A DNA stretch of 64,000 nt, taken from contig NIVC01000995.1 of NCBI GenBank assembly GCA_002269645.1, positions 124,001 to 188,000 on the forward strand. The letters run 5' to 3'. Positions 3,301 through 58,238 of the stretch are shown here, piece after piece (the stretch's first letter is position 1; every line of letters starts with the position of its first letter). Below the pieces are notes generated by a model. The model had not been told where the DNA came from, did not search any database, and saw nothing but the letters and a program-made list of their open reading frames with translations. The position numbers and the translations under genes were made by a program. This stretch comes from Macrostomum lignano (Eukaryota).

Positions 3301-6300
3301 GATGGTAGATAGCGGATGGTAGATAGCGGATGGTAGATAGCGGATGGTAGATAGTCGATAGCGGATGGTAGATAGCGGATGGTAGATAGCGGATGGTAGA
3401 TAGCGGATGGTAGATAGCAGATGGTAGATAGCGGATGGTAGATAGCGGATGGTAGATAACGGATGGTAGAGAGCGGATAGCGGATGATAGATAGCGCATA
3501 ACGGATGGTTGGTAGATAGCCTACAGAGGGTGGTAGGTAGCGGATAGCGGATTTTAGGTGGCAGATAGCGGATAGCGAATATTGCTAACAGAGAAAGCCA
3601 AAGCCGTTAAACCCATTTTGACCCCCAGTTGTTGCTCCCAGCAGGGTAAAAACAGATACCCTTAGCAACCAACAACCCCCATTATGCGTTCTGCTGCTTT
3701 CGCTCGCACTGCATTACTGCTTTGGCGGCAAGGAGTTCTATATATACATGTACAATATCCGGAGTGGAAACTTAGCCACACAAAACCTGATCATCGTAAA
3801 CGCTGCATCACCAGGAATTAGGGCTTAAAGGCCTAAAAAATATGTTTTCCCTTATATATCCATAAAAAAATGCTTCATCGATTGCAAAATATACTAGATC
3901 AACAATAAAAATTATTGTTTTCACAATCTAGATGGCTAGCTTCAAGACTCCATGATTCCAAGTCCCTTGCCCCCGAGCACTGGCTCAGTAAAAGGCATTG
4001 AGAGGCTACATTGAAAAGGCCGGGTCCTGAGTAGCCCTGTTAGCCAGTTCTGAATTGGCTTTTCCCATTGCCCAGAGTGGCTTCATTTTCAGTTCCAACT
4101 TGGCCAAGGTGGGAAGGGGAGGAGAAAAGTGAAACAATATCTTGTTTAATGCGTGCGTGAAAACAAGGCGACCAAAAAATGACAAGGGTCACGTGACTAC
4201 AAGGTGTGTTATGAGCCTGTTAGAAGCTTTGCGTGAACTAGAGGAAGCTCTAGCAATTACGAAAGGGCAGTGCGTTTTGCTAGTTTGAGTACGAAACCTG
4301 CTCAAGCGGCTGGAACTGGGCAAAACTTACCGGTCATAAAAACACCCGGTGTTCTACAGTCATAAAACACCCGGTGTTCTACCGGTCAGAAAAACACCCC
4401 GATGTTTTACGGTCATAAAAACACCCCGATGTTTTACGGTCACAAAAATATCCCGATGTTTTACGGTCATAAAAACGCCCCGATGTTTTACGGTCACAAA
4501 AACACCCCGATGTTTTACGGTCATAAAAACACACCGATGTTTTACGGTCATAAAAACACACCGATGTTTTACGGTCATAAAAACACACCGATGTTTTACG
4601 GTCATAAAAACACCCCGATGTTTTACGGTCATAAAAACACCCCGATATTTTACGGTCATAAAAACACCCCGATATTTTACGGTCATAAAAACACCATTTT
4701 TTGTTTTATCGGCTACCAAGCCAATTGAGATCCCTCACAGAAATTGATTCGCAATTTTCCCTTGGCCCCACCCTCACACCAGGCGGCCAATGCGTGGACC
4801 TGGTGAACAGATTCCAGTGCATCTGCCGACTCAACTACCGCGGCCCCAGGTGCACCGTCAACCTGCGCGACTGCCGCAACCTCACCTGCCTAAACGGCGG
4901 CGTCTGTCGCGACTTGGCCGACGGTCTCGGCTGCGACTGTCCGGCCGGACTGAGCGGCAAATTCTGCGAATTGGGGACGCCGGCGGCCTCGGACTGGCCG
5001 CCCACAGTCAGCTGGTCTTCTACAGAGGACCTTCGGCGGCAGCCGGGGGTGGCTGTGCTGCTGCTGGTCATCGCCGTGCTGCTCATCCTGCTGCTGCTCC
5101 TGGCCGCCATCGTCTCCGTCTTCGTCTGGCAGCGTCGCCGAAAACGACGAAGCCATCAGGCCGGAGTCACCGCCGCTGCTGCGGCTGCCGCCGCGGTTGC
5201 CATCCAGGATGCCGGGTCCGATGATGACGACGATGGCCCTCGACGCCAGAAGATTGACAGCTTCGGCGGCGAAGAGTCCGCCAAGCTGCGTATCAGCTGC
5301 GACGATTTTTACAGCATCGGCGACGTCGACCAGCCCGGACTGGCGATGAACAACAGCCGGTGCAACGTGCTGCGGCCGGGGCTGGCCGAGAGCAAGATGG
5401 ACTACTTTGCGCACAAGCAGATCAACAACCTGCTGAGCGCCAGCCAGGGCTGCCTCAGCCCCAGGGAGCTGCGACAATCCGCCGCCTTGATGCATGGGTA
5501 CGGGCCTGGCCGTGTGTCTGGCCGTGTGTCTGACTGTGTGTCTGGCTGTGTGTCTGACCGTGTGTCTGGCCGTGTGTCTGGCCGTGTGTCTGACTGTGTG
5601 TCTGGCCGTGTGTCTGACCGTGTGTCTGGCCGTGTGCCTGGCCGTGTGTCTGACCGTGTGTCTGACCGTGTGTCTGACTGTGTGTCTGGCCGTGTGTATG
5701 ACCGTGTGTCTGACCGTGTGTCTGACCGTGTGTCTGACCGTGTGTCTGACCGTGTGTCTGACTGTGTGTCTGACTGTGTGTCTGACCGTGTGTATGACTG
5801 TGTGTCTGACCGTGTGTATGACTGTGTGTCTGACCTTGTGTCTGACTGAGTGTCTGACAGTGTGTCTCACTGTATCTGGCCGTGTGTCTGACCGTGTGTC
5901 TTACTGTATCTGGCCGTGTGTCTGACCGTGTGTCTGACCGTGTGTCTGACCGTGTGTATGACCGTGTGTCTGACCGTGTGTCTGACCGTGTGTCTGAACG
6001 TGTGTCTGACTGTGTGTCTGACCGTGTGTATGACCGTGTGTCTGACCGTGTGTCTGACCGTGTGTCTGACCGTGTGTCTGACCGTGTGTCTGACTGTGTG
6101 TCTGACTGTGTGTCTGACCGTGTGTATGACTGTGTGTCTGACCGTGTGTCTGACTGAGTGTCTGACCGTGTGTCTCACTGTATCTGGCCGTGTGTCTGAC
6201 CGTGTGTCTGACCGTGTGTCTGACCGTGTGTATGACCGTGTGTCTGACCGTGTGTCTGACCGTGTGTCTGAACGTGTGTCTGACTGTGTGTCTGACCGTG

Positions 6301-8660: not shown

Positions 8661-9829
8661 AAACGAGCTGAAAAAAAATATAAAAATGAAAAATTAGAAT
8701 ACTTTCTTTGCATTCAAAAGAATTCAAAGAAATTCAAATTCAAAGAGAATTTCCGAGTTTGACAATTTGTGTAGCCGGCCTTTAGATAAAATTTTTAAAG
8801 CCTTAGCTTGCTCTCCCCTTCGACTGCTTCTTTCTTTCATTTTATTTTAATACCGAGCGAGCTGTGCTCATTCAGATGCAACAATACGATCGGGCCATAG
8901 ACCATTCTCTACCGCAATGCTGCAGCGAGATGAATAATAACACAATAATCCATAGAAATAAAGACTTTCCGTGACACATGCTTTTTTCGGGAGTTATATA
9001 TTAGTTACATTATAATACTACGAATTACCATAGACAAAAGGTTGCAGTTTCGTTAGATGCACGTTGAAGACGAGAAGAGAGAAGAATAAAGCAGAGCTAG
9101 CTTTACTGACTCAAAAAGAGAATGGAACTACCGAGAAAAGAAAACTAATAGACCTGCTGCACTTTCCAAATGAAATAATTTCTTGGAATGTCCACGGATC
9201 AAATCAAAGATTTATTGACGCATTCCCTCAAGGATTTATCAAGGATCAAGGATGCATTCCCTGAGTCCAAGATTTCTACAGGCCTACAGATGGAATATCT
9301 GAAAAAAATGTCCAGGAACTACTGGAAACCTGCTTTGTGTAAGAACTAAGAATGTAACGTGCACTGCGTCGTGGTAGTGACGTGACTCCTACAGCCCAAG
9401 AGCCTGCTAACACCACTGTTGAGCCGCCTAATCAAGAGCAACATGTTTTGATGATCGATTCATTGGCAGTGATGAGCCAGTCTCTGAACACAGTGACAGT
9501 GGAACAACTGATATTACCACCGCAACGACGCTGACCAACACTACTGGCAATGGCAGGCCTACAGTGATGTACAATATCTACGGTTTACTGCACAACTGCA
9601 TTTTTAATCACTGAAGTGAATCAGATCGAACTACGCGTGAATTGACTATATTTTAGGACCGCATGCTTGCTTTCAATCTCTGTTTACTTAATATCTGCTC
9701 CTGTTTTTAGCGTGCCTATAATGGAAAGATAGTGCACGGCTTGCAAGTGCAACAACGCCTAGGACCACGAGTGCGCGTAGCGCACGAGTGTCTATGGCGT
9801 TGTTGCACACGCAAGCCGTGCTTCTATCA

Positions 9830-10624
9830 CATTATCATATAGACTAGCCAACAGTGGCTATTCATTTTTGTCTATGGCAATTTGCAAAGAACAGGGTTGA
9901 GGGAGGCAAGGAATATCTTTCTCTCCACTACAGCGCGATATTTGTTCGCCTCAGTGTGCGTTCATTTGAAAACATGATTCATCTGTCACAATTCCCGGAC
10001 AATTGCATAACCGGCTTGACTACGGCGGAAATCGAGAAGCATGTAGAGCTAGCTCATGGACAGACATTCGTTGATCGAGCGGACGATGTTCGATGATGAG
10101 CCGCTGTATGGAGCCAGTTCGTCTTCTGCGACCAACGATAAGTCTGTGGCTATCGTCGGACCATCTGGCGATATGGATTCGGCGGGGGATGCTACGTCTA
10201 TCTCCGAGGTCCCAAAGCGGGTGGCAAGTGTTGGAATGATGACGTCAGTCCAAAATGTCAAGGTTGACGTTCAAGCATCTTCGGCCGATACTGTTCGACC
10301 GGAGCTACATATTCATCTGAGTGGGAGTTTCAGCAATTGCAACTTCAAATTCGGTGATCAGTGAGTACTGATGAGTACTGAGTGAGTTACTGAGTTTTCG
10401 AGTTACTACTAGAGCACTGACTACTAGACAAAGAGCTCGTTAAAAATGTTCAACTATTTGCTACGTTTGCTTTTCGTAAAATATAAAGTTTGTGTTGTTG
10501 CATTATTGCACGCTGAAAGCCGCCAGCGTGAATTTTTGGCGCATTATTGCACCCTGATTGTCAATTGTCTATGGTAAAATCTCCATTATTTTGACTCGCT
10601 TGTTGGCTAGACTATATGATAATG
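9830..10624. mobile_element. TIR-bounded element without clear TSD (possibly Crypton-like) carrying a 102-aa ORF
   Basis: CATTATCATATAGACTAGCCAACA (9830-9853) vs TGTTGGCTAGACTATATGATAATG (10601-10624), 23/24 match; internal ORF 10056-10364 ends SGSFSNCNFKFGDQ. Confidence 0.65.
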
Positions 10625-11861
10625 CATTATACGCACGCTGCCTGCGTTAAATGCACGCTGATTTATTTGTTGAAATACATAATGATTACCACGGTTTGGC
10701 CATAGACTATGTTGTTAAATGCACACTTCGTCGTGTTATAATGTTTTGAACTGGGTTTAGACCACAGATTCTATAAACACTAGATGGCTCACTCTCCATT
10801 CCTTCAGTGGAGGCCAAATTCTCACTGTCTATGGTTGGAATCCCTCGCTCGCGAGACTTCGCCTCCCCCCCCCCCGCGCCAGCAGCTTATAACTAGCGTA
10901 GAGCCAGCAAAAGAACTTTTCTCTCACTGATTCTAGCACACCCAGTTCTTTCTCCTGCTATCTGTCTGTGGGTTAGACTGGGCCCCAGTCTAAATTGTCC
11001 GAATTGAATTTCCGCTAGCTTTTTTTAGAACTGGACTTTGATCAAAATTGAACATGAAAAGGTGTAGTTACGCTTTAGTTTCAGCTCAGTTGTGTGCTCA
11101 GTTTTATATTTCTCTAAATGTTTGTGCTTTATTGCTTACTCCACAAATCCAGCACCAGTGACACTGGAAATGATTAAATTAGTGCTCCGATTACTATATT
11201 GGTCGCCTCAGAGCCCACAGTTTGGGCCATAGACTACTGAGAAATCAATCTTATAGCGCGTGATTTCCCTTCCCCACTGATTAATTAAATTGCTTGCTCT
11301 AAGTGTAAAATGGCTTCCAAATATTATATTTGCTACGCACTCGCTTCATCTACTGAACAGTCGCATGCGCGGTTAAGCAGACAGACAATCTGAAATAAAA
11401 TTGCACAACAATTGCCTGTAAAGTGCTGCAAATACTTTGAAAAAACTTGACTACATATCTGCGCGTCACTGCTCTCCTATCTCTTGCAGTCAGAAAACTT
11501 CCATTTTTTATTTTTAAACGGCGGCGGAAATTTCTAAGAAATAAAAGAACCGCGTTGACGTCATGCTTCGGTGAACATGTATCCATGGAGTTCTAAAACT
11601 ATAGCTATCTGGATTGGAAACTGGTGGCTCGCTAACAACTATCCTTTGGTTTACATACCGCACATTAAGACGAAAATCGCGACTTGCAATGAGTTGCCCA
11701 TTCACCTGACCCTGACCTTGACCAAAGGAGGGGACATGGGGGCATGTGCCCCCTTTGGTCAAAGTTATGTAGGGTGCTACATGTATGCTTGCAATTTTTC
11801 TAACAAGGTTCTATCCTTAGATTTTCGTTAGCTTCTTTAATCCTAAGTTTGTCTCTAGGGG

Positions 11862-12731
11862 TGTCAAAATCAGTGCCCAGGCCAGTTGTCTGATGTCAAA
11901 GCGCCAAAATCAGTGCCCAGGCCAGGTGTTTGATGTCAAAGCGCCAAAATCAGTGCCCAAAGCCAGGTGTTTGATGTCAAAGCGCCAAAATCAGTGCCCA
12001 AAGCCAGCTAGGTGTTTGATGTCAAAGCGCCAAAATCAGTGCCCAAAGCCAGGTGTTTGATGTCAAAGCGCCAAAATCAGTGCCCAAAGCCAGCTAGGTG
12101 TTTGATGTCAAAGCGCCAAAATCAGTGCCCAAAGCCAGCTAGGTGTTTGATGTCAAAGCGCCAAAATCAGTGCCCAAAGCCAGCTAGGTGTTTGATGTCA
12201 AAGCGCCAAAATCAGTGCCCAAAGCCAGTTGTCTGATGTCAAAGCGCCAAAATCAGTGCCCAAAGCCAGCTAGGTGTTTGATGTCAAAGCGCCAAAATCA
12301 GTGCCCAAAGCCAGGTGTTTGATGTCAAAGCGCCAAAATCAGTGCCCAAAGCCAGGTGTTTGATGTCAAAGCGCCAAAATCAGTGCCCAAAGCCAGCTAG
12401 GTGTTTGATGTCAAAGCGCCAAAATCAGTGCCCAAAGCCAGGTGTTTGATGTCAAAGCGCCAAAATCAGTGCCCAAAGCCAGGTGTTTGATGTCAAAGCG
12501 CCAAAATCAGTGCCCAAAGCCAGCTAGGTGTTTGATGTCAAAGCGCCAAAATCAGTGCCCAAAGCCAGGTGTTTGATGTCAAAGCGCCAAAATCAGTGCC
12601 CAAAGCCAGCTAGGTGTTTGATGTCAAAGCGCCAAAATCAGTGCCCAAAGCCAGGTGTTTGATGTCAAAGCGCCAAAACCAGTGCCCAAAGCCAGCTAGG
12701 TGTTTGATGTCAAAGCGCCAAAATCAGTGCC
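11862..12731. repeat. 41/45-bp minisatellite (GTGTTTGATGTCAAAGCGCCAAAATCAGTGCCCAAAGCCAG +/- CTAG)
   Basis: About 20 units in two length classes. Confidence 0.95.
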
Positions 12732-13856
12732 AGTTCGCTAGCAGTTAACTTTCTATCCAGATGTACATGTACTTATCTAGAACTCCTTGGCAAACGTTGG
12801 AGTTCGTGGCCGCATTCCTATCGCTTCTCTATTACTGGCCGGGTGCATTGTGCGCCAGCCCTCCCAGTTCGGTCTGCAGTGCTGCTATAAAATAACTACT
12901 CGCCCCACCCACAAACAAACACTTCAATGCCGGCCGGCGCGCTCTGGTAACCAGGAGCAACCAGACTATATAGGTGGAATGCGAAAGCTAAAACTCTTTC
13001 TCTCTCTTTCTCTCTCTCTGTAGCGAGCGTGAAAATTCCCATCAATCTGCATTGGCAACTTGTGCGCTGGGCGACCCTCCCCCCCCCTACCGTAACAAAG
13101 TTCTAAGTGCAGTTAAACTCTTGCAGTGAGCAAGCGGCAGAGTCACCGTGACTCCTTCCTCTCTGTCTTCTTATTATCTGTTCTCCTCTGTGTGTCTGCG
13201 GTGCGCACGCTTGCACAGCATGGCTAGGCCAGGGCCTATAGGCGCTGGCACATAGAGATACCACCTGACAGCTCAATTGCTTCCACTTGTGCCCTCATTT
13301 TGCCGATGCTTTAAGTGCAGGCTCGTCGAACTTTTCGTTTATTTATTGACGGAAGAAATAAAATCCAAGGCAGGATTTGTTTAATCGAACTCTGATCCAG
13401 TCAGTTATTTTATTCAATTTATAAGCAAAAAATGCTCAGAAAATTTGCGATTGAATACAATCGGCGGCACTTTTTTAGACTTTCAATTGTGAGCAATTAG
13501 TGAGCAATGAGAAACAGCTGAGAGCCGAGCTCACTTGAGGTCAGGAGGGCACAAGCGGTATGAGCAGCTGGAGGTCATATGAACTGTGTAAAGATGTGGG
13601 TTGTGACTGGTTTGCGCGTGAAGCAAGCTGAATAAACATGCACAAATTTAAAATAATGTAAATTTCAAAGACAACTTCGCGGAATAATTGAGTTGGTTGG
13701 CCAGCGCAATTACAAAGCCAGTTTCCTAGCTGAGTTCAACTATTCATTGATGATGTAGAGAGTACAGCATCACAGCATCATAGCAACGCTAATTAGCGAG
13801 AGCAGCACAAGAGTTAAACTGTCAAATTTGGTGTAACGGCCGGAGCGGAGGACACT

Positions 13857-14150
13857 TCAGCACTTCAGGCTGGGCGGCGGCTTCTTGCCCTGCTTCCGGT
13901 ACAGGTTGCACTGGTAGGCTCGCATGAGCACGTTCTCAGGTCCGCGTCGCTTTCGGCTGAGCAGTGCTGCCGCTGGGGACTCGGAATCCGGCCGCTGCCG
14001 CATCAAGTAGGTCTCGCTGGCGGCCGAGTTGCGGTTCAGCTCCAGTCGCAGAGCCCCGGATGGAGACAGGGCCACAGCGTCCAGTGTGGCGATGCACAGG
14101 GCCATGGTGAATACCAGAGCAATGAGAAGGCTGCCGTTTAATCGTTGCAT
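13857..14150 (-). CDS. Secreted prepropeptide, 97 aa (signal peptide - propeptide - RKRR - 28-aa 2-Cys peptide)
   Basis: Intronless ORF with hydrophobic N-terminus (LLIALVFTMALCIATLDA), furin-type RKRR site and mature GPENVLMRAYQCNLYRKQGKKPPPSLKC. TATAAAT at 14274-14280 (-); AATAAA-type signals (plus-strand TTTATT) near 13340 and 13410. Confidence 0.7.
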   Translation of the reverse strand: MQRLNGSLLIALVFTMALCIATLDAVALSPSGALRLELNRNSAASETYLMRQRPDSESPAAALLSRKRRGPENVLMRAYQCNLYRKQGKKPPPSLKC

Positions 14151-14273
14151 GTCTGCTGTCTGCTTTCTTGCTCCTTTGTTGTTTTGTCTTCTTTTGCCTT
14201 TTGCGTCTGACTGGCAGTTGCGAATGAGTTCGTAGAAAAGTGGAGGGCTTGGAGGCCGCCGCCGGGGCCTCGC

Positions 14274-14280
14274 ATTTATA
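14274..14280 (-). promoter_or_regulatory. TATA box of the prepropeptide gene
   Basis: TATAAAT in GC-rich context about 125 bp upstream of the ATG at 14150. Confidence 0.5.
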
Positions 14281-14784
14281 GCCGGCGTTGGAAGGGGGTG
14301 GGGCAGGGGGGGGCAGTGTTCTATTTTTAGCTCCTCCCCCGCCAGCCAGCGTCAGTTCTGAAGCTGCTGTGCCCAACCGTCTGCTGTGCTGTTGTGTGCT
14401 GTGTGTGGAGGCGTGGGAAGTGCTGAAGTGACTCAGGCAGCCCCCCAAAAAATTGGGACTTGACAAGAGATTCTGGACCAAAAATCTGGAGTAACTGGAG
14501 TATGTATCCAATTTGTCACACACGTCACCTTGTCATACTTAAGTTTTCTAAACTAAATTAGAACAGCTATACTAGCTACTGTATTTTGTTAAAATTTGTA
14601 GCTTCTGTAGCTTGTAGATTTTAAGCTTTCAAATCAGTGTTTTCCTGTAGCAGGAATCGCAAAACTCCGGCCCATGAAGCCCTCTCTATCCGGCACTGTC
14701 GGGTCCTTTGAAACTTCACAATAGCAATTCGGCCCGATAAAGGCTTGTTTCTCTTCTGAGTTTTTTCCCCTAATCTCCTCTTTT

Positions 14785-15127
14785 TTCTCATCTCCCATCT
14801 CCTCTCTCCTCCTCTCCCCTCTCCCAACTCGTCTCCTCTCCTCTCTCTCCTCCCTCACTTCTCTCTCCCCTCCTCTCCCTTCTCCCCTCCTCTTTCCCCT
14901 CTCTCCTCCTCTCCCCTCTCCCAACTCGTCTCCTCTCCTCTCTCTCCTCCCTCACTTCTCTCTCCCCTCCTCTCTATCTCCTTTCTCCCCTTCTCTATCT
15001 TCTCTCTCCCCTCCTCTCCCTTCTCCCCTCCTCTTTCCCCTCTCTCCTCCTCTCTCTCCCCTCCTCTCCCGTTCTCTCCTACTTTCACTTCTCTCTCCTC
15101 TCTCCTCTCCTCTCCACTCTCCTCTCT
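14785..15127. repeat. CT-rich polypyrimidine tract with an internal ~97-bp duplication
   Basis: Direct inspection. Confidence 0.85.
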
Positions 15128-15969
15128 CTGACCCGCAGTCCTGTGCTAGGTTCTCTATCTGCCCTTAAGTTGAAAATAGTTTACCGGCCCCTGCCCTATA
15201 GCATCATTACCATTTTTTAGTATTTGGATTATGATCATTTTTGTTGAAAATTGTAAAACGTTAAAATATGCCTAGTCGTATTGCATGTAAGTGGCTGGAT
15301 GAAAATGAGGATTTTATGTGGGATGGAGAGTTGTCAACTCCAGACACTGGTTTAAAGTTTCCTTGGACTTGCCAATAAAGGAGAGGTGCGAGAGAGAGAC
15401 GGGGGGTGAAATAGTGTGACACTCTGCACCTGAATAGATGGAAAATCCAGTTCTATAAAGCCAACAGCCAACCAACGCCACCTTAGTGACCGTCTGGGCC
15501 TGTCCGTCACCTGGCAGACTTAGTTTCCCATACCTAAATCCCTTCCTTCTCCATGGGAACGGCAAATGCAGTGGCTGCTATGTGAAGCTGCAGGTGCAGA
15601 GTTTTGGGTGAGGATTTTAACACTTTTGGAGACGTGGTGCAACTTAAAGCTTGGCTGACTCACGTTTTAACTGAACTCCTGGCCCAAGGTGGACTCAAGC
15701 TCAGGGTGTTAAAATAGTATTAAAGAGAATTTTCATGTGGATCTGGAATTAACAACTGTTCTCTCTAATTTTCTCAAATCATTTCCGTTTTTGGTTCTGT
15801 TTGTCGGAAATTAGGGGTAAAAAATTGCATTGAAATGTAAATAGACCTATTTATGAGATTCTGCGCAGCCAGTCACTTGCGGCTTGTTACAATTTGTCTT
15901 GGAAAATCTTCCCGCAGACGAGCAATTAGAAAATTTCTATATTTTTTTATTTCAAATTACATGTACACA

Positions 15970-16745
15970 TGTCTCTTGTGGGCCGCTAACTGTCTCTTGG
16001 TGGGTGCCCCTGTCTCTTGGTGGGCCGCTAACTGTCTCAGTTAGGGTGCCCCTGTCTCTTGGTGGGCCGCTAACTGTCTCTTGTTGGGTGCCCCTGTCTC
16101 TTGGTGGGCCGCTAACTGTCTCTTGGTGGGTGCCCCTGTCTCTTGGTGGGCCGCTAACTGTCTCTTGGTGGGTGCCCCTGTCTCTTGGTGGGCCGCTAAC
16201 TGTCTCTTGGTGGGTGCCCCTGTCTCTTGGTGGGCCGCTAACTGTCTCAGTTAGGGTGCCCGTCTCTTGGTGGGCCGCTAACTGTCTCTTGTTGGGTGCC
16301 CCTGTCTCTTGGTGGGCCGCTAACTGTCTCTTGGTGGGTGCCCCTGTCTCTTGGTGGGCCGCTAACTGTCTCTTAGTGGGTGCCCCTGTCTCTTGGTGGG
16401 CCGCTAACTGTCTCTTGGTGGGTGCCCCTGTCTCTTGGTGGGCCGCTAACTGTCTCAGTTAGGGTGCCCCTGTCTCTTGGTGGGCCGCTAACTGTCTCTT
16501 GGTGGGTGCCCCTGTCTCTTGGTGGGCCGCTCACTGTCTCTTGTTGGGTGCCCCTGTCTCTTGGTGGGCCGCTAACTGTCTCTTGGTGGTGCCCCTGTTT
16601 ATTGGTGGGTCCCCTTTCTCTTGGTGGGTGCCCCTTTCTCTTGGTGGGTGCCCCTTTCTTTTGGTGGGTGCCCCCTTTCTCTTGGTGGGTGCCCGTATTT
16701 CTTGGTGAGTACCCCTGTCTCTTGATTAGCGCCCCTGTCTCTTGA
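15970..16745. repeat. 42-bp dimeric minisatellite (GTCTCTTGGTGGG core)
   Basis: Direct inspection; degenerates toward the 3' end. Confidence 0.93.
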
Positions 16746-17920
16746 TGGGCGCCCTCAGTCTCTTGGCTTGATTTTGGATGCCAAAAAGAAATGCGGCGAC
16801 AACTTCCTTTGTTGGCAATCAGTATCGTATAATACATTCAATGCGAGCTCTTAGCCCAGCCATTCAATCCGCCGACGCCCCGCCCACGCACTGCATGGGC
16901 TGACGCATGCGCACTAACCAACAGCCAACTGACAGCTCAACTCACTGTTCATGAGCAGCTTTCATATCGATTTGGAGGGCAAATTGCCAAAAGTTTATAG
17001 AGCTCCGCATTCCGCAATGAAGAAAACCCGGTGCATGCAAACAGGTGAGCACTGTGTGTGTGTGTGTGTGTGTGTGTGTCAACCCGCCCACTGGAACAGC
17101 AAACAGACTTTGTGCAATATAAAACTGTTTGCGCGATAAACTCTTATCATTAATGATGAGATACTGCATAGTTGTATACGAGCTACTTATAATAAATAAT
17201 GTATTTTCATTTTGAACTAAAATCATTAAATAGACGAAACCTACAGCAGAATATATTTTGGGACAGTGCCAATTAGGGACTAATACCATTATCTTCATCA
17301 CTGACTATAATTCAATAAAAATTCATGTAAAATGAAAGCTGAAATCAGCTCCCAGTGTTAGTTATAAACCAGCCAATGCTGCGAGTCCGTGTGTACACAT
17401 AATAACAATATAATTATCCCACATTAGTATTGAATATTTATTATGATATTATTTATAAATAGATTTATATAGAAGTGTTCTAAACCGCAACAATACACAA
17501 GTGTATTCATTGATATCCTGCTACTAAACAGTTCGCTATCAGCAAGGTTGCAGCAATGTACACATGTGCATATGCCATTTGAGTTAAGCGATGAAGAACA
17601 TCAATCAAGGTAAAAACACAAATTTAATAAGACATGCTGCGATCGCGTTAAGAATTATCAAATTAATTTCAACTAGAAAGCATGCGAATAATCAGATAGC
17701 CATTGGGATAATGGAGCTCAGGACGAGAGCAGATCAGGAATATTATTCGGAAAATAATTAGAAAGAAACAATATAAGACAAAAATCAAAGTCACAGTCTC
17801 TGAGGAAGGACAAGGAGCAATTCCAGTCACTCACAAACGGGGGAAGAAAGACAATGCTGAATAAGTGCCAGATAAGTTGATAAGTAGCTACGACTTCGCG
17901 GGTTCAGAGAGATGTGAAAT

Positions 17921-18530
17921 CATAATAATCCCATTTTGGGATATTTTAGGCTGTCAACTCAAACAGGGAGATATGGAACCATAATAATCCCATTTTGGGA
18001 TTTTTAGGCTGTCAACTCAAACAGGGAGATATGGAACAATAATAATCCCATTTTGGGATATTTTAGGCTGCCAACTCATACAGGGAGATATGGAACCATA
18101 ATAATCCCATTTTGGGATATTTTAGGCTGTCAACTCATACAGGGAGATATGGAACAATAATAATCCCATTTTGGGATATTTTAGGCTGTCAACTCATACA
18201 GGGAGATATGGAACCATAATAATCCCATTTTGGGATATTTTAGGCTGTCAACTCATACAGGGAGATATGGAACCATAATGATCCCATTTTGGGATATTTT
18301 AGGCTCCCAACTCACACAGGGAGATATGGAACCATAATGATCCCATTTTGGGATATTTTAGGCTGCCAACTCACACAGGGAGTTATGGAACCATAATAAT
18401 CCCATTTTGGGATATTTTAGGCTGCCAACTTATACAGGGAGATATGGAACCATAATAATCCCGTTTTGGGATATTTTAGGCTGCCAACTCATACAGGGAG
18501 ATATGGAACCATAAGAATCCCATTTTGGCA
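17921..18530. repeat. 59-bp minisatellite containing ATCCCA-TTT-TGGGAT
   Basis: About 10 units. Confidence 0.93.
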
Positions 18531-19424
18531 TATTCTAGGTCCTCAGCCCCTATGGTAAGACAGGGAATAGTGAAAATCCCATTTAGGATAAGTAAAACAG
18601 CACAATACAGAAGCGACAAGGTTAGACGCGGATCAGAAGGCGCAGGTGAGTCTGTATTTTTTTTAGCGCGGAATTATTAAATCGATCACAAGCCAACAAA
18701 TACGCATTATATATAAGCAATAGCATATATATAATCTATTCTACATTCGAATAGCAAGTCCTGAATATTGCTTAGAGAATGGGAGAGCTTAGACAACAGA
18801 AGTGGCACTGATAAGAGGAGGGCTTGCAGCGGCCAGGCGAGCCAACGTGAGGCTCACGTTGAACCTTTTTTAACTGACCAATATACATGAACGTGTTCCC
18901 ATTGAAGACTCGCACATCGAAAACACAATTAGGTGTACATAGCAAGGCACCACCTGCGTCAGCCGCTGGCCGCTGCTTCATAGCGCTTCAAATAGAAACA
19001 TCGCTTACGCCTACTAAATCAACTTACAGATACAAGTCTGAATTGTAGAAAAATAAAAAAGCGCACAAAATGTCTATAAATAGGAATATCCATACAACAC
19101 GGTGTTAGCAATATTATCATATAGTAATTGTGCCCCCATTGAAGTAACTGTGTTTTACTCGGCCATACTGTTACACATAGCAATAATCTATATCGGACAG
19201 CATTACAAACCCCTGCACACGCTCTGGATACGGGCAAGAAGCATCGGAGGCGCTGGCAAAAGTGCATGTAGCAATCGCGATTGGAGAATGCGCAAACAAT
19301 TCGGGGAAAAAGCAACACTGCAAAGCTAATAATAGGGAAATCACAATGGGATGATTATTGTTTGCTTGCCGCAGTCTGCAGTTCTCACAGCCCAGCTGGA
19401 TCAGTGCGCGGGTCTTTGGCGCGC

Positions 19425-19590
19425 TAGACAGACACACAGACAGGTGGACAGACGGACAGATGGACAGACAGACAGACAGGCAGGCAGACAGACAGACACA
19501 GACAGACAGACGGACAGACAGGCAGAGAGACATACAGACAAACAGACAGACAGACAGGCAGACATACAGACAAACAGACAGACAGACAGG

Positions 19591-19645
<55 letters not shown>

Positions 19646-19739
19646 CCAGCCAGGCAGACAGACAGCCAGGCAGACAAAAAGACAGGCAGACAGACAGACA
19701 GACAGACAGGCAGACAGGCAGACAGGCAGACAGACAGAA

Positions 19740-19776
<37 letters not shown>

Positions 19777-19780
19777 GGCG
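19425..19780. repeat. (GACA)n microsatellite just 3' of the USP32 stop
   Basis: Direct inspection. Confidence 0.92.
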
Positions 19781-19801
19781 GTCAGTGAGTCGGGACGGGC
19801 A

Positions 19802-22800
19802 TCACTGCAGGCTGCACATCTTGCGCATCTCGGTGTCCACCTCGTCCTCCTGAATCGGTCCCTCGCACGGCGCCCTCCCGGTGACATCCGGCAGCAGTTT
19901 CTCCAATTTAGTATCGTCCCGCTCGTAGAATAACAAATAGGCGGTTGTCATGTCCACTTGGTCCTCAGACACCGGCTGCAATGTGGCGTGAATGTGAATA
20001 AGTGTGCAAAGTAATTTGTAGAAAGACTGAGAGTAGACAGATAGAGTACAGAGTGGACTGAAGGAGTCAAGAGTGGACTGAGAGATTAGAGAGTGAACTG
20101 AGAGAGTAGAGAGTGGATTGAGAGAGTAGAGAGTGGACTGAGAGAGTAGAGAGTGGACTGAGAGAGTAGAGAGTGGACTGAGAGAGTAGAGAGTGGACTG
20201 AGAGAGTAGAGAGTGGATTGAGAGAGTAGAGAGTGGACTGAGAGAGTAGAGAGTGGACTGAGAGAGTAGAGAGTGGACTGAGAGAGTAGAGAGAGAAAGA
20301 GTATAGAGTGGATCGAGCGAGTGGATAGTGGATCAAGAGAGTAGATAGCCGACACTGTAGAGAGTAGATGAACTGAAGAGTAACTAACACGTGTAAAAGC
20401 ACATTAGCATAGTAATGAGATAATTTTGGCAGACGCCCACCTTGACAGAGCTGTCATTGAACAGGTACCACTGGCCGGTGGAGTTTCTCGCATAGGACAC
20501 ATAATGGCCGCCGCCCAGTATGCCAGAGTGGCAGATCACAGCGTAGAGATGGTATTGGGCATCGTCTGTGGCGGCGGGCGCCCCGGGACTGGCGTGCGGC
20601 TGCAGCCGGAGACCGCGAGTAGGACAGGTGACCACTTTGTGCGACTTCACCCACCGATTAGCCACGAAGTGGAAGCGTTTGAGGTGCAGAATGAGAATGG
20701 GAGGCAGGCGCCATAGCCGCATGGCCAGGCTGGCAGTGCGGTGCTCGCGGCATTTGGAGCAGAAATAGGTGTCCTTGTCGTTAAGCTCCTCGACGCGGGT
20801 GAAGGCGCGAAAGCAGGCGTCCAGGTTCATTGGCTCGGCGACAACCTTGATAAAGAATAGAAAGTCGCATTCTCCTACTTATTAACAATAATAAAGAAAC
20901 CAAGAGAGTTAAAGACTATCATACATGGGCACGGGACAGTGTCATGGACGCCTCTAGGTAGAAATGGGACAGTGTCAAGGATATCTAAATGAACACTGGA
21001 CAGTGTCCAGGGCACGGAACGGAAGCGCAACAGTGCCAGGGACGCCTATATGAACACGGAACGGGTGCGAACTCTAAGGACGCCTATATGAACACGGAAC
21101 GGGTGCCAACTCTAAGGACGCCTATTATGAGCACGGAACGGGTGCCAAGGACGCCTATATGAACATGGAACGGGTGCCAAGAACGCCTATATTTACATGG
21201 AACGGGTGCCAAGGACGCCTATATGAACACGGACGGGTACCAAGGACGCCTGAGTGGATATGGCGACACCTAGACAGACATTATTGAATCCTAGAACGAC
21301 ACAGGACCGTTTTAAGGGTGACTAGGTTATGAGACGCCTAAGCCAGTTATAAGCATTATTACGAGATCGTGAACTATAGCAGCAACCCTAAACAAAGAAG
21401 CTTACAACCCAAGCTGCAAACCTTTTGCAATTGCTGCAAAGATGGATCAGTAGCAAAGTCCCTCTCTAGCGAGGCCTGATAGCGCAGGTGCAAAGCTGTA
21501 TGCTCCCAGTCTACAGCCAGATGGTCAGAGCGTGACGTGTCATAGATGGAATCGTCGCACGGCACAAGGCAGCCGCGGCAGAACCGGTACCAGGGACACA
21601 GGGCGCAGGCCAGACCGGTGCTATTGATGCACTTCACCTGGAATGGATACTCGCCGGAGGCGCCCACCATGTCGCCTAAGGTGGCGTGATTGGAATGGGG
21701 AAACTCCGGCTTGGGAGTTACAAGGCGCTTCACCTGCGGGATCGATGTTGATGTAGGATGTTAAGCGTTCCGAATAAGTGGTCCGCTAATCCCTTATAAT
21801 ACCTGGGTAATCAGAGGTCCGCTAATCCCTTATAATACCTGGGTAATCAGAGGTCCGCTAATCCCTCATAACACCTGGGGAGTCAGAGGGCCGCTAATCC
21901 CTCATAACACCTGGGGAGTCAGAGGTCCGCTAATCCCTCATAACACCTCGGGAGTCAGAGGGCCGCTAATCCCTCATAACACCTGGGGAGTCAGTGGGCC
22001 GCTAATCCCTTATAACACCTGGGGAGTCAGTGGGCCGCTAATCCTTTATAACACCTGGGGAGTCAGTAGTCCGCTAATCCCTTATAACACCTGGGGAGTC
22101 AGTAGTCCGCTAATCCCTCACAACACCTGGGGAGTCAGTGGGCCGCTAATCCCTCATAACACCTGGGGAGTCAGTGGGCCGCTAATCCCTCATAACACCT
22201 GGGGAGTCAGTGGCCCGCTATCCCTCATAACAAAACACCTGGGGAGTCATTAGTCCGCTAATCCCTCATAACACCTGGGGAGTCAGTGGGCCGCTAATCC
22301 CTCATAACACCAGGGGATTAGCCAATTCGCACAACAGCTCACCTGCATCCAAATGCAGCGATAAACGTCGGAGTTCTTCATCCCGGGCAGCAGAGGCAGC
22401 ACGCATGGCAGGCTAAACAGAGACAGCCTGGTTTTGTGATAAGATAGAAAGTACACATCCATGCGAACCTGCTTTCGATGATACACTAGAGCAAATCCCA
22501 GAGTTCTAGACATCAACGCGGACGATGAGGATGACTGCAGGCTTTGTGTCTGCTGCTGATCGGGCAACTGCTCGGCCAGGCTGTTCACTGAGCTGTTCCT
22601 TGACAGCTGGCTGTTGGCGCTGGGGCCATTGCTGCCGTTGCAAACTGGCTGACGGGTAGCCGGGGTCACGGCTGGGGTCACGGCCGGGGTCACGGACACG
22701 ATCGGCACAGCTGACGGCATCAGGTAGGCGAATAGCGAACTACCAGAAGCCAAATATTTAATCTGTTGCTCGTCCGATGGGAAGTTCTGCCGAGATTTAA

Positions 22801-25800
22801 AACAATTGAGTTAAAAAATGCGTTACTTGCTACTAATGAGTAGTAGTGCGATCAATCCAAAAATACAACGCTAACCAGCACAGTTGAAGAGATAACCGCT
22901 GCCAGCACAATGAGGCGCTGATCGATGCCGAACCTGTCTGACACCGCCTTCCGCACCTCGGCGTACTTGTCATCGTGATTCAGCAGCACGCCGAACCGGA
23001 CCGGCAGCCGCTCGTCTAGGAAGAACACTGCGGAGTGGGAAGGGCGGTGTGGGAGGACAACGACCGTTTATTGAGTAACTAATAAGGGCTTGCCGATATT
23101 TAACATCCTGATAACTAGTATCTCATCATCTAATACCTAATATCTTATCATCTGACCCCTAGTATCTCACCTAGTAGCTCACCTAGTATCGCATCATCTG
23201 ACACCTAGTATCTCACCTAGTAGCTCATCATCTCAACCTAGTATCTCACCTAGTATGATCATCTTAAACAGTATCTCATCATCTGAAACCCTAATACCTC
23301 ACATTAGCTCATTAATTAACTCACCGATAACCTCAATTAGCAGTGAGTTCTCCAGCGGCAGCGGCAGGGACAGCACCGAGAAGGGATCGAACTTAACGGA
23401 CGAATTCGAGCACACCTTGCACTGCACCTCGGTGCGCAATTGGCCGTGAAATAAATCGACAATAATACTCTGATTGCGGGCCAGGTGATTGTCCCAGCAT
23501 TCCGCTGCCACCTCGTCATCCGGGCGGCCGTCCGAGTCCTTCAGCTCGGTGTAGGGCTTCTCCTTCACCCGGTTCAGATCCTCGTGTAAGCCGTCGAGTA
23601 GGAAGCTGAGAAACTCTTGCGAGTCGTGCTGCTGATTGCCTGAGAACCTGCGCGAGTACCTGGCGATCGTCATCTGTAGGTATAGTGCGATGGAAAGTAG
23701 AACCATGTATTGTAGGAGACATGAATCATGTATTCTCTGTTACTTTGATCATGTATCATAAGACATGTATCATGTACTCTCTGTCATTTCGATCATGTAT
23801 CATCTGGCACATGAATCATGTATTCTCTGTCACTTCGATCATGTATCATCTGGCACATGAATCATGTATTCTATGTCACTTCAATCATGTAACATGTGGC
23901 ACATGAATCATGTATTCTCTGTCACTTCGATCATGTATCATCTGGCACATTAATCATGTATTCTATGTCACTTCAATCATGTATCATGTGGCACATGAAT
24001 CATGTATTCTCTGTCACTTCAATCATGTATCATGTGGCACATGAATCATGTATTCTCTGTCACTTCAATCATGTATCATCTGGCACATGAATCATGTACT
24101 CTCTGTCACTTCGATCATGTATCATCTGGCACATGAATCATGTATTCTCTGTCACTTCGATCATGTATCATGTGGCACATGAATCATGTACTCTCTGTCA
24201 CTTCGATCATGTATCATGTGGCATATGAATCATGTACTCGCTGTCACTTCAATCATGTATCATCTGGCACATTAATCATGTATTCTATGTCACTTCAATC
24301 ATGTATCATATGGCACATGAATCATGTATTCTCTGTCACTTCGATCATGTATCATGTGGCACATGAATCATGTACTCTCTGTCACTTCGATCATGTATCA
24401 TGTGGCACATGAATCATGTACTCTCTGTCACTTCAATCATGTATCATCTGGCACATGAATCATGTACTCTCTGTCACTTCGATCATGTATCATCTGGCAC
24501 ATTAATCATGTACTCTCTGTCACTTCGATCATGTATCATCTGGCACATGAATCATGTATTCTCTGTCACTTCGATCATGTATCATCTGGCACATTAATCA
24601 TGTATTCTATGTCACTTCGATCATGTATCATGTGGCACATGAATCATGTACTCGCTGTCACTTCGATCATGTATCATCTGGCACATTAATCATGTACTCT
24701 CTGTCACTTCGATCATGTATCATCTGGCACATGAATCATGTACTCTCTGTCACTTCGATCATGTATCATCTGGCACATGAATCATGTACTCTCTGTCACT
24801 TCGATCATGTATTATGTGGCACATGAATCATGTACTCTCTGTCACTTCGATCATGTATCATGTGGCACATGAATCATGTATTCTCTGTCACTTCAATCAT
24901 GTATCATCTGGCACATGAATCATGTACTCTCTGTCACTTCGATCATGTATCATCTGGCACATGAATCATGTACTCTCTGTCACTTCGATCATGTATCATC
25001 TGGCACATGAATCATGTACTCTCTGTCACTTCGATCATGTATCATCTGGCACATGAATCATGTACTCTCTGTCACTTCGATCATGTATCCTCTGGCACAC
25101 GAATCATGTACTCTCTGTCACTTCGATCATGTATCCTCTGGCACACGAATCATGTACTGTCTGTCACTTCGATCATGTATCATCTGGCACAAGAATCATG
25201 TATTCTCTCACTTCAATCATGTATCATCTGGCACATGAATCATGTATTATTTCACTTCGATCATGTATCATCTGGCACATTAATCATGTATTATTTCACT
25301 TCGATCATGTATCATCTGGCACAAGAATCATGTATTATTTCACTTCGATCATGTATCATCTGGCACATTAATCATGTACTCTCTGTCACTTCGATCATGT
25401 ATCATCTGGAACAAGAATCATGTACTCTCTGTCACTTCGATCATGTATCATCTGGCACAAGAATCATGTATTCTCTCACTTCAATCATGTATCATCTGGC
25501 ACATGAATCATGTATTCTCTCACTTCGATCATGTATCATCTGGCACAAGAATCATGTATTCTATGTCACTTCGATCATGTATCATCTGGCACATTAATCA
25601 TGTACTCTCTGTCACTTCGATCATGTATCATCTGGCCATTAATCATGTACTCTCTGTCACTTCGATCAAGTATCATCTGTCACAAGAATCATGTATTATT
25701 TCACTTCGATCATGTATCATCTGGCACATGAATCATGTACTCTCTGTCACTTCGATCATGTATCATGTGGCACATGAATGATGTATTATTTCACTTCGAT

Positions 25801-33503: not shown

Positions 33504-35041
<1,538 letters not shown>

Positions 35042-58194: not shown

Positions 58195-58238
<44 letters not shown>

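What the first reader, a model, noticed from the sequence alone, without database searches (positions are those of the whole stretch)
13857..14280. Orphan intronless prepropeptide gene encoding a 28-aa disulfide-ring peptide
Seen: TATA box, a 97-aa ORF with a signal-peptide-like N-terminus (likely cut near TLDA|VA), a ~40-aa propeptide, RKRR, then GPENVLMRAYQCNLYRKQGKKPPPSLKC-stop, with downstream AATAAA-type signals. Established: RxK/RR is the furin/prohormone convertase consensus, and signal-pro-dibasic-mature is the architecture of neuropeptides, toxins, antimicrobial and seminal-fluid peptides. Inference: Cys12-Cys28 would close a 17-residue cationic ring; the internal RK and Q-GKK allow alternative cleavage or amidation. 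I do not recognise the family, so it may be an undescribed signalling, defence or reproductive peptide.
Basis: partly seen in the sequence, partly recalled or inferred. Interest (0 to 1): 0.82.

Follow-up and report, generated by a model that had tools for sequence, protein, structure and literature searches.

The report
Orphan flatworm secreted propeptide gene
This is a real, already annotated but uncharacterised single-exon gene of the flatworm Macrostomum lignano. It most likely makes a small secreted precursor that is cut at RKRR to release a 28-residue, positively charged, disulfide-looped peptide of unknown role. It is a plausible new peptide family, but one of very many lineage-restricted genes in this genome.

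Summary
A 97-codon ATG ORF lies on the minus strand at 13857-14150, with TATAAA at 14280-14275. It has one N-terminal hydrophobic segment, RKRR at residues 66-69, and a 28-residue C-terminal peptide with two Cys.

The window is Macrostomum lignano contig NIVC01000995.1. The ORF is already a gene model built from RNA-seq, named only "hypothetical protein" (paralogue Mlig013743.g1, PAA64917.1).

Coding is well supported:
- GC3 is 0.77, against 0.44-0.48 in the flanks.
- Codon-usage log-likelihood is +26 bits in this frame and negative in the other five.
- All four differences from the 95-98% identical duplicate locus are synonymous, including CGA->AGG at the first Arg of RKRR.

No homologue was found in 1.8 billion representative proteins, Pfam, PDB or the contig scans.

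AlphaFold predicts a signal helix, a disordered pro-region, and a confident helix (71-87) followed by a GKKPPPSLKC tail. The helix is not amphipathic, which argues against a membrane-lytic antimicrobial peptide.

Processing, the disulfide, the site of expression and the function are all inferred, not shown. The nearest canonical AATAAA is 443 nt past the stop codon. Orphan genes are very common in this genome, so interest is modest.

The parts
14321..14330 (-). MEF2-consensus-like element CTAAAAATAG (YTA(W)4TAR), 41-50 nt upstream of the TATA box. It is a possible tissue-specific promoter element and is speculative.
   Evidence: the pattern CTAWWWWTAG matches 6 times in the window against 0.75 expected. 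One match is here. It is unchanged in the duplicate locus L001 (one search lists no difference at 14321-14330). Whether it functions was not tested.
14275..14280 (-). TATA box (TATAAA).
   Evidence: It lies about 37 nt upstream of the 5' end of the annotated model. With 49 TATAAA in 128 kb of strand, the chance of one falling in a 20-nt window on the correct strand is about 0.008 (my arithmetic).
14237..14245 (-). Inferred transcription start region. The annotated model begins at 14243-14245, and an Inr-like CCACTTT (YYANWYY) sits at 14243-14237.
   Evidence: The window's own annotated product P0002 (128 aa) starts at 14243. The paralogue's P0001 (126 aa) starts within a few nt of the equivalent position. 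The nearby CCAAG does not fit the M. lignano trans-splice acceptor motif [T/C]TNCAG (PMC8629364).
14151..14243 (-). 5' UTR, about 93 nt. It has no upstream ATG and no in-frame stop, which is why the model is flagged 'partial'.
13857..14150 (-). Complete coding sequence: 97 codons plus TGA, in a single exon.
   Evidence: GC3 is 0.765. Codon LLR is +26.2 bits in this frame and negative in the other five frames. Four of four differences from L001 are synonymous.
14070..14150 (-). Predicted signal peptide, residues 1-27 (MQRLNGSLLIALVFTMALCIATLDAVA). The n-region contains Arg3, the hydrophobic core is L8-L23, and the AVA|L site follows.
   Evidence: The Kyte-Doolittle profile shows a single hydrophobic peak of up to 2.9 at residues 4-20, and none later. 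AF2 predicts a helix at 4-28. The cleavage site comes from the -3/-1 rule and is an inference.
13956..14069 (-). Propeptide, residues 28-65 (38 aa). It is electrically neutral and predicted to be disordered.
   Evidence: One search gives pI 6.3 and charge about 0. One search gives pLDDT below 50 over residues 36-69.
13944..13955 (-). RKRR (residues 66-69), a furin / proprotein-convertase consensus R-X-K/R-R.
   Evidence: Seen directly in the sequence. Arg66 is CGA here and AGG in L001, a two-step synonymous change that keeps Arg.
13860..13943 (-). Predicted mature 28-aa peptide GPENVLMRAYQCNLYRKQGKKPPPSLKC. Net charge is about +5. Cys81 (13910-13908) and Cys97 (13862-13860) would close a 17-residue ring.
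   Evidence: AF2 on the 30-mer gives mean pLDDT 84, with a helix at 71-87 followed by a 10-residue non-helical tail. There are 0/87 nt differences from L001. The calculated monoisotopic mass of the oxidised form is 3215.65 Da.
13409..13414 (-). First canonical AATAAA downstream of the stop, and so a candidate poly(A) signal. Others are ATTAAA at 13385 and AATAAA at 13347 and 13343.
   Evidence: The actual 3' end was not determined.

Best explanation
A TATA-driven, single-exon, lineage-restricted gene of Macrostomum lignano encodes a 97-aa secretory prepropeptide.

Proposed mechanism:
1. The first AUG of the mRNA starts translation. The N-terminal leader (about residues 1-27) directs the chain into the ER and is removed (inferred).
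2. Cys81 and Cys97, the only cysteines left, form one intramolecular disulfide (inferred).
3. A furin-type proprotein convertase cuts after RKRR69 in the late secretory pathway (inferred from the consensus). This releases a disordered 38-aa propeptide and the C-terminal 28-mer. No carboxypeptidase trimming or amidation is needed, because the peptide ends at the stop codon.
4. The product is a hydrophilic peptide of about +5 charge. It consists of a non-amphipathic helix (71-87) followed by a Gly-Lys-Lys-Pro-Pro-Pro tail that is tied back to the helix by the disulfide.
5. It most likely acts outside the cell as a ligand (a signalling, hormone-like peptide) rather than as a membrane-disrupting agent.

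Shown: the ORF, the promoter motif, the coding signature, purifying selection, the existence of a gene model, and orphan status.
Inferred: every processing step and the function.
For: Identity and transcript:
- The window is 100% identical to M. lignano NIVC01000995.1.
- The ORF is an annotated gene. The annotation pipeline builds models from RNA-seq (StringTie/TACO) and calls ORFs with TransDecoder (PMC5730564).

Coding:
- GC1/GC2/GC3 are 0.61/0.50/0.77. This matches the neighbouring USP and Delta exons and contrasts with flanks at 0.44-0.48.
- Codon LLR is +26 bits in this frame and negative in the other five.
- It is the only one of 110 ATG-ORFs with a leader, positive codon evidence and a furin site.

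Selection:
- Against the duplicate locus L001, the flanks differ at 2-5% of sites. The CDS has 4 differences, all synonymous.
- P(4/4 synonymous) is 0.005-0.01.
- At the pooled flank rate of about 3.3%, roughly 7 non-synonymous changes were expected and none was seen. Poisson P is about 1e-3 (my arithmetic).

Promoter: TATAAA lies about 37 nt upstream of the model's 5' end, and there is no upstream ATG.

Secretory architecture: there is one N-terminal hydrophobic peak and the rest is hydrophilic.

Structure:
- In the full-length model, AF2 gives a helix at 4-28, a pro-region with pLDDT below 50, and a helix at 72-86 with pLDDT 72-90.
- In the isolated 30-mer, mean pLDDT is 84.

Against a lytic role: the helix hydrophobic moment is 0.148, below the shuffle mean of 0.25, and GRAVY is -1.0.
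Against: - No signal-peptide or cleavage predictor was available, so the leader call rests on hydropathy and the -3/-1 rule.
- I did not see RNA-seq reads myself. The transcript is inferred from the existence and provenance of the gene model.
- No orthologue is available, so the mature peptide, its Cys residues and RKRR cannot be shown to be preferentially conserved.
- Pro at P2' (G70-P71) is not optimal for furin.
- No canonical poly(A) signal lies within 440 nt of the stop.
- The AF2 models are single-sequence, and Foldseek found nothing meaningful.
- No expression site, peptide mass or phenotype is known. Searches of the supplements of several M. lignano papers for the gene ID found nothing.
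Confidence: 0.5

Rival explanations
1. The gene is real and its product is secreted, but the product is not cut at RKRR. The functional molecule would be the whole ~70-aa basic protein (pI about 10.4), for example a gland, mucus or matrix-associated secretory protein. The basic cluster would then serve as a charge patch.
For: - The pro-region also shows no amino-acid change against L001 (3 synonymous differences only), so it too is constrained.
- Pro at P2' is sub-optimal for furin (my own knowledge).
- The protein after signal removal has a charge of +8.7.
Against: - R-K-R-R is a full furin consensus, lying in a region predicted to be disordered and accessible.
- The confident fold is confined to the part downstream of the site.
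- Arg66 is retained through a two-step synonymous codon change.
Confidence: 0.17
2. The 28-mer is a host-defence (antimicrobial) peptide: a cationic, disulfide-looped effector secreted by epidermal or gland cells.
For: - Net charge is about +5, the peptide is small, and it has a single C-terminal disulfide loop.
- Taxonomically restricted genes are typical of antimicrobial peptides (general knowledge).
- A furin-type site suits the constitutive secretory pathway.
Against: - The predicted helix is not amphipathic. Its hydrophobic moment is 0.148, and 77% of shuffles are equal or higher. Mean hydrophobicity is -0.30 and GRAVY is -1.0.
- The propeptide is neutral, not anionic.
- There is no tandem gene family or local paralogue, unlike many antimicrobial-peptide loci.
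Confidence: 0.12
3. It is a reproductive secretory peptide, made in the prostate or another accessory gland and transferred to the partner. This would be analogous in role to insect sex-peptide-type molecules.
For: - Reproduction-related genes of Macrostomum evolve fast and often lack homologues (PMC7336406, title and abstract).
- The peptide has a C-terminal disulfide loop that ends at the last residue, as in Drosophila sex peptide and DUP99B (my own knowledge).
Against: - The gene ID is absent from the stored part of the germline/neoblast-enriched tables of PMC5816591. Those tables do use this ID format. The evidence is weak because the file was cut when stored.
- No positive expression evidence exists.
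- The protein is perfectly conserved between the two duplicate copies. That is not what fast sexual-conflict evolution predicts, although the divergence time is short.
Confidence: 0.13
4. The ORF is not translated. The locus would produce a non-coding or spurious transcript, and the prepropeptide look would be coincidence.
For: - No homologue exists anywhere.
- 20% of non-trans-spliced M. lignano gene models are non-coding (PMC8629364).
- The locus sits in a minisatellite-rich intergenic stretch.
Against: - The GC3 and codon signature is specific to this frame.
- There are 0 non-synonymous against 4 synonymous differences where about 7 non-synonymous were expected.
- The start codon is the first AUG of the model, with a purine at -3.
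- It is the only ORF in the window with this combination of features.
Confidence: 0.08

Closest known systems
Preprosomatostatin / cortistatin / urotensin II / allatostatin-C type precursors (comparison from my own knowledge; Pfam tested)
   Same: Both are precursors of about 100 aa with a signal peptide, a spacer and a basic cleavage site. The bioactive peptide sits at the extreme C-terminus and carries one disulfide ring. Somatostatin-28 is also 28 residues long and also ends in Cys.
   Different: - The ring here has 17 residues, not 6-12.
- The core motifs (FWKT, FWKY, YFNPISC) are absent.
- There is no Pfam Somatostatin hit and no sequence similarity in any search.
C-type natriuretic peptide (CNP-22/53) (from my own knowledge)
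   Same: It is a furin-processed precursor. The peptide ends exactly at the second Cys, with a 17-residue disulfide ring and no C-terminal tail.
   Different: The invariant ring motif CFGxxxDRIxxxSGLGC is absent. Here the ring is CNLYRKQGKKPPPSLKC, with one coincident Leu. No Pfam hit. The shared ring size is a coincidence of number, not evidence of homology.
Drosophila sex peptide / DUP99B (from my own knowledge)
   Same: They are small, lineage-restricted secreted peptides with a C-terminal disulfide loop that closes at the last residue.
   Different: They have no propeptide or furin site, since the mature peptide follows the signal peptide directly. The loop has 13 residues with a conserved CRLNLGPxxGGRC motif. 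There is no sequence similarity.
Cationic disulfide-loop antimicrobial peptides: brevinin 'Rana box', thanatin, arenicin (from my own knowledge)
   Same: They are cationic peptides of 20-30 aa with a single disulfide loop, cut from the C-terminus of a prepropeptide.
   Different: Those peptides are amphipathic helices or beta-hairpins with hydrophobic faces. This peptide is hydrophilic and its helix is not amphipathic. It has no BRICHOS domain and no anionic pro-piece.
Trp-cage / exendin-4 C-terminal cap, [20 protein letters not shown] (from my own knowledge; a lead only)
   Same: There is a local pattern NLY-helix, then Gly, then PPPS. AF2 predicts a helix followed by a Pro-rich tail that could pack back on the helix.
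   Different: There is no Trp. The link here would be a disulfide rather than a hydrophobic cage. It is not a glucagon-family precursor. Foldseek gave no significant match.

Membership tests
Convertase-processed secretory prepropeptide (a kind, not a homologous family) | Cleavable N-terminal signal peptide | tested here: inconclusive
   There is a single N-terminal hydrophobic core L8-L23 (KD up to 2.9), preceded by Arg3 and followed by an AVA|L site. No later hydrophobic stretch exists. AF2 gives a helix at 4-28. No trained predictor (SignalP) was available.
Convertase-processed secretory prepropeptide (a kind, not a homologous family) | Basic cleavage motif (R-X-K/R-R or a dibasic pair) separating the pro-region from the product | tested here: met
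   RKRR lies at residues 66-69, in a segment predicted to be disordered. Arg66 is kept through a CGA->AGG change in the duplicate.
Convertase-processed secretory prepropeptide (a kind, not a homologous family) | Actual proteolytic release of the peptide, and an even number of Cys in the product | not testable with these tools
   The product has exactly two Cys (sequence). Cleavage and disulfide formation need peptidomics or expression experiments.
Convertase-processed secretory prepropeptide (a kind, not a homologous family) | The gene is transcribed and the ORF is translated | tested here: inconclusive
   An RNA-seq-derived gene model exists at this locus and at the duplicate (pipeline described in PMC5730564). 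The coding signature and purifying selection are met. I did not see reads or peptides directly.
Somatostatin / urotensin II / allatostatin-C superfamily | Short (6-12 residue) C-terminal disulfide ring with an aromatic-Lys or FNP core motif; Pfam Somatostatin profile | tested here: not met
   The ring has 17 residues and no such motif (sequence). There is no Pfam hit even at E<=10.
Natriuretic peptides (ANP/BNP/CNP) | 17-residue ring with CFGxxxDRIxxxSGLGC | tested here: not met
   The ring size matches at 17, but the motif is absent. No Pfam hit.
Amphipathic cationic antimicrobial peptides | Net positive charge together with an amphipathic secondary structure | tested here: not met
   The charge of about +5 is met. 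Amphipathicity is not met: the hydrophobic moment is 0.148, below the shuffle mean of 0.25, and mean hydrophobicity is -0.30.
Any described protein family (Pfam, PDB, 1.8e9 representative proteins) | Detectable sequence or fold similarity | tested here: not met
   - Pfam: none.
- Word-indexed search: only its own cluster.
- Exhaustive phmmer: only itself plus a spurious translated tandem repeat.
- PDB by sequence: none.
- Foldseek: none significant.
- Metagenome and viral contigs: none.

The most novel reading that the evidence does not exclude
A Macrostomum-restricted, possibly recently originated gene encodes a new class of bioactive peptide. The peptide would be a miniature 'helix plus polyproline tail' fold stapled by a Cys12-Cys28 disulfide and released by furin. 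It would act as a ligand for an orphan flatworm receptor, and could come from muscle or neurons given the MEF2-like site next to the TATA box.
Probability: 0.2. Interest if true: 0.5.

Novelty: new member of a known kind. Interest (0 to 1): 0.3.

Why it matters
If the peptide is made and is active, it would add a lineage-specific signalling or effector molecule to a flatworm model with transgenesis (PMC5730564) that is used for RNAi studies. Its function and receptor could therefore be tested directly. The compact TATA promoter and single exon would also make it a convenient reporter or secretion cassette. It also illustrates how short prepropeptide genes sit in databases as 'hypothetical protein, partial'. 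It does not touch a long-standing open question. About 43% of non-trans-spliced M. lignano genes lack conservation (PMC8629364), so an orphan secreted peptide is not surprising in itself.

Tried and rejected
1. Homology searches all found nothing:
- Pfam.
- The 5.8-billion-cluster word search.
- Exhaustive phmmer over 1.84 billion representatives. Its only extra hit, P0003 (E 2e-4), is a 650-aa translation of a tandem repeat and was rejected as spurious.
- PDB by sequence.
- Foldseek with both AF2 models (best E = 2, generic helix fragments).
- Metagenome and viral contig scans.
- tblastn for hidden paralogues in the window and the three related loci.

2. RNA-gene alternative: no Rfam family matches anywhere in the window.

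3. Literature:
- The gene ID and five fragments of the peptide occur in no searchable full text.
- Supplements of PMC5816591, PMC7336406, PMC5946080 and PMC12896417 do not contain the ID.
- PMC12435804, PMC11398382, PMC10786194 and PMC8629364 have no stored supplements.
- The negative for PMC7336406 is uninformative, because no ID beginning Mlig0137 occurs there.
- The negative for PMC5816591 is weakly informative, because the ID format is present but the file was cut when stored.

4. Trans-splicing with an SL-donated AUG was considered, because the M. lignano spliced leader ends in ATG. It was rejected for two reasons. The nearby CCAAG does not fit the [T/C]TNCAG acceptor motif. Splicing at that AG would also put the SL AUG out of frame with the ORF.

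5. The overlapping 195-aa alternative-frame ORF (13936-14523) was rejected. Both alternative sense frames score -21 and -28 bits on codon usage, and it begins upstream of the TATA box.

6. Kinship with natriuretic peptides or somatostatin, suggested by the ring size of 17 and the length of 28, was rejected for lack of the defining motifs.

Full report
WHAT IS THERE

The minus strand of 13857-14150 carries an ATG-to-TGA ORF of 97 codons.
- RKRR is residues 66-69.
- The C-terminal peptide is residues 70-97, with Cys at 81 and 97. That makes a 17-residue ring counting both Cys.
- The only other Cys (C19) lies in the leader.
- TATAAA is at 14280-14275 on the same strand, 130 nt upstream of the ATG.
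- No ATG lies between the TATA box and the start codon.
The first canonical AATAAA starts at 13414, 443 nt past the stop, followed by ATTAAA at 13385 and AATAAA at 13347 and 13343. Only an AATGAA variant (13748) is closer.

WHERE IT COMES FROM

The ORF matches GenBank PAA64917.1, 'hypothetical protein BOX15_Mlig013743g1, partial [Macrostomum lignano]', at 100% identity.

Three places in assembly GCA_002269645.1 carry the gene:
- L002 (NIVC01000995.1) is 100% identical to the window over 11 kb, so it is the window itself.
- L003 is a 99.6-100% identical copy, either an allele or a redundant contig.
- L001 (NIVC01001700.1) is a duplicate locus that is 95-98% identical in non-coding DNA. This fits the recent genome duplication of this species (PMC10733133, title and abstract).

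In all three places the gene sits between a USP32-like gene and a Delta/Jagged-like gene. The USP32-like gene is 1456 aa, lies upstream on the same strand, and has EF-hand, DUSP and UCH domains. The Delta/Jagged-like gene lies downstream on the opposite strand. The intergenic stretch is full of minisatellites.

IS IT A GENE?

(a) Transcript.
- The Mlig_3_7 annotation was produced from RNA-seq by StringTie/TACO, with ORFs called by TransDecoder (PMC5730564). A gene model therefore implies a transcript.
- The window's own model (P0002, 128 aa) reads through from 14243. The paralogue's model (P0001, 126 aa) begins within a few nt of the equivalent position.
- 'Partial' means only that no in-frame stop precedes the ATG within the transcript.
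- The model's 5' end lies about 37 nt downstream of the TATA box and on an Inr-like CCACTTT. With 49 TATAAA in the window, such a placement has a chance of about 0.008 (my arithmetic).
- The gene span equals 128 codons plus the stop, so the coding sequence has no intron.

(b) Composition.
- GC1/GC2/GC3 are 0.61/0.50/0.77, against 0.44-0.48 in the UTR and flanks. The USP and Delta exons show the same pattern (GC3 0.62-0.78).
- A codon-usage model trained on those exons gives +26.2 bits in the annotated frame, and -4 to -42 bits in the other five frames.

(c) Selection.
- Against L001, the flanks differ at 2-5% of sites. The CDS has four differences, all synonymous.
- Two of the four lie in one codon, CGA->AGG at Arg66, the first residue of RKRR.
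- The chance that four random substitutions are all synonymous is 0.005-0.01.
- At the pooled flank rate of about 3.3%, roughly seven non-synonymous differences were expected and none was found. Poisson P is about 1e-3 (my arithmetic).

(d) Uniqueness. Of 110 ATG-ORFs of at least 60 aa in the window, this is the only one with an N-terminal leader, no later hydrophobic stretch, positive codon evidence and an RX[KR]R site.

I conclude that it is a real protein-coding gene, with a probability of about 0.9.

WHAT THE PRODUCT LOOKS LIKE

- Hydropathy shows one peak at the N-terminus (KD up to 2.9, core L8-L23). Arg3 precedes it and A25-V26-A27|L28 follows, which is the best -3/-1 site. Everything after that is hydrophilic.
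- The 38-aa pro-region is neutral (pI 6.3). The 28-mer has a charge of about +5, pI 9.8 and GRAVY -1.0.
- Single-sequence AlphaFold2 on the full protein gives a helix at 4-28, pLDDT below 50 across residues 36-69, and a helix at 72-86 with pLDDT 72-90.
- The isolated 30-mer (RR plus the peptide) has mean pLDDT 84, with a helix at 71-87 followed by a 10-residue non-helical tail, GKKPPPSLKC.
- Cys81 lies in the helix and Cys97 at the end of the tail.
- The helix is not amphipathic. Its hydrophobic moment is 0.148, against a shuffle mean of 0.25.

MOST LIKELY MECHANISM (INFERRED)

1. Co-translational entry into the ER, and removal of the leader.
2. Formation of the single possible intramolecular disulfide.
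3. Cleavage after RKRR69 by a furin-type convertase.
4. Secretion of a 3215.65 Da peptide that needs no further C-terminal processing.

The KK is followed by Pro, and both sites lie inside the loop (my own knowledge of convertase preferences).

The peptide is hydrophilic, non-amphipathic and has a defined mini-fold, so I favour an extracellular ligand over a membrane-active antimicrobial. A gland or reproductive product and an uncleaved 70-aa protein remain open. A MEF2-consensus-like CTAAAAATAG lies 41-50 nt upstream of the TATA box (6 matches in the window against 0.75 expected). This hints at muscle or neuronal expression, but it is only a lead.

COMPARISON WITH KNOWN FAMILIES

No homologue was detected in any of these searches:
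- Pfam.
- The 5.8-billion-cluster search.
- Exhaustive phmmer over 1.84 billion representatives. Its one extra hit is a translated tandem repeat.
- PDB by sequence.
- Foldseek.
- Metagenome and viral contigs.
- The window and related loci themselves.

In its architecture the gene works like preprosomatostatin or pro-CNP. Each has a signal peptide, a spacer, a basic site, and a C-terminal peptide closed by one disulfide that ends at the last residue. Somatostatin-28 shares the length, and CNP shares the 17-residue ring. The defining ring motifs of both families are absent, so membership is rejected. Sex peptide/DUP99B and cationic loop antimicrobial peptides are analogues in shape only. The NLY...G..PPPS pattern recalls the Trp-cage of exendin-4. 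That resemblance is recalled from memory and was not tested.

NOVELTY AND INTEREST

The gene is already in GenBank as a hypothetical protein, but nothing has been written about it in the literature I could search. It is best filed as a new member of a known kind: a convertase-type secretory prepropeptide, and probably the founder of a lineage-restricted family.

In M. lignano, 42.9% of non-trans-spliced genes are non-conserved (PMC8629364), so a specialist would not be surprised. I could not obtain expression data. Supplement searches were empty or uninformative. Interest is 0.3. The decisive work is simple and is listed under next steps.

Noticed in passing
window 20384-28212 (-): Exons of a USP32-like deubiquitinase, with an EF-hand (27712-28212), a DUSP domain plus the Cys box (26024-27253), and UCH core exons (23299-23706, 20384-20830). 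This is the 1456-aa annotated gene upstream of the peptide gene on the same strand.
   Followed up: partly
window 4701-5849 (+): Terminal exon of a Delta/Jagged-like Notch ligand, with EGF repeats, a transmembrane segment and a cytoplasmic tail. The annotated 757-aa product carries MNNL, DSL and EGF domains. The ORF then runs on into a (GTCTGTCA/SDRV)n-type repeat.
   Followed up: partly
window 11865-12731, 15970-16766, 17905-18539, 14786-15128, 19426-19777: Minisatellite arrays bracket the peptide gene: 41/86-nt units x20, 42-nt x19, 59-nt x11, a CT-rich tract, and (AGAC)n x88. Copy number differs between the duplicate loci. Much of the window elsewhere is also tandem repeats, which generate long spurious ORFs.
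   Followed up: partly
window 33510-34952 (+), within the AT-rich block at about 30-34 kb (GC 0.33): A 480-aa ORF with an RNase H domain (PF00075, E 1.5e-13). It looks like the 3' part of a non-LTR retrotransposon ORF2.
   Followed up: partly
window 14321-14330, 19074-19083, 19326-19335, 31195-31204, 59630-59639, 59708-59717: The MEF2-consensus-like pattern CTAWWWWTAG occurs 6 times against 0.75 expected from shuffles. One copy lies just upstream of the peptide gene's TATA box.
   Followed up: partly
window 13936-14523 (-): A 195-aa GTG-ORF overlaps the peptide gene in another frame. Codon usage is negative in both alternative sense frames, and the ORF starts upstream of the TATA box. It is judged spurious.
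   Followed up: yes
window 56866-58956 (-) and 51740-52048 (+): Further ORFs have positive codon-usage scores but no Pfam domain. One is a 406-aa poly-Gln/poly-Ala-rich ORF (57736-58956), with a neighbour at 56866-57390. The other is a 102-aa ORF (51740-52048, LLR 26 bits). They are probably exons of other genes.
   Followed up: no
L001 (NIVC01001700.1) against window 9001-20000: The duplicate locus is 95-98% identical in unique non-coding DNA. The segment 14600-15000, the CT-rich repeat, drops to 85%. L003 is an essentially identical second copy of the window's locus on a 47.7-kb contig.
   Followed up: yes
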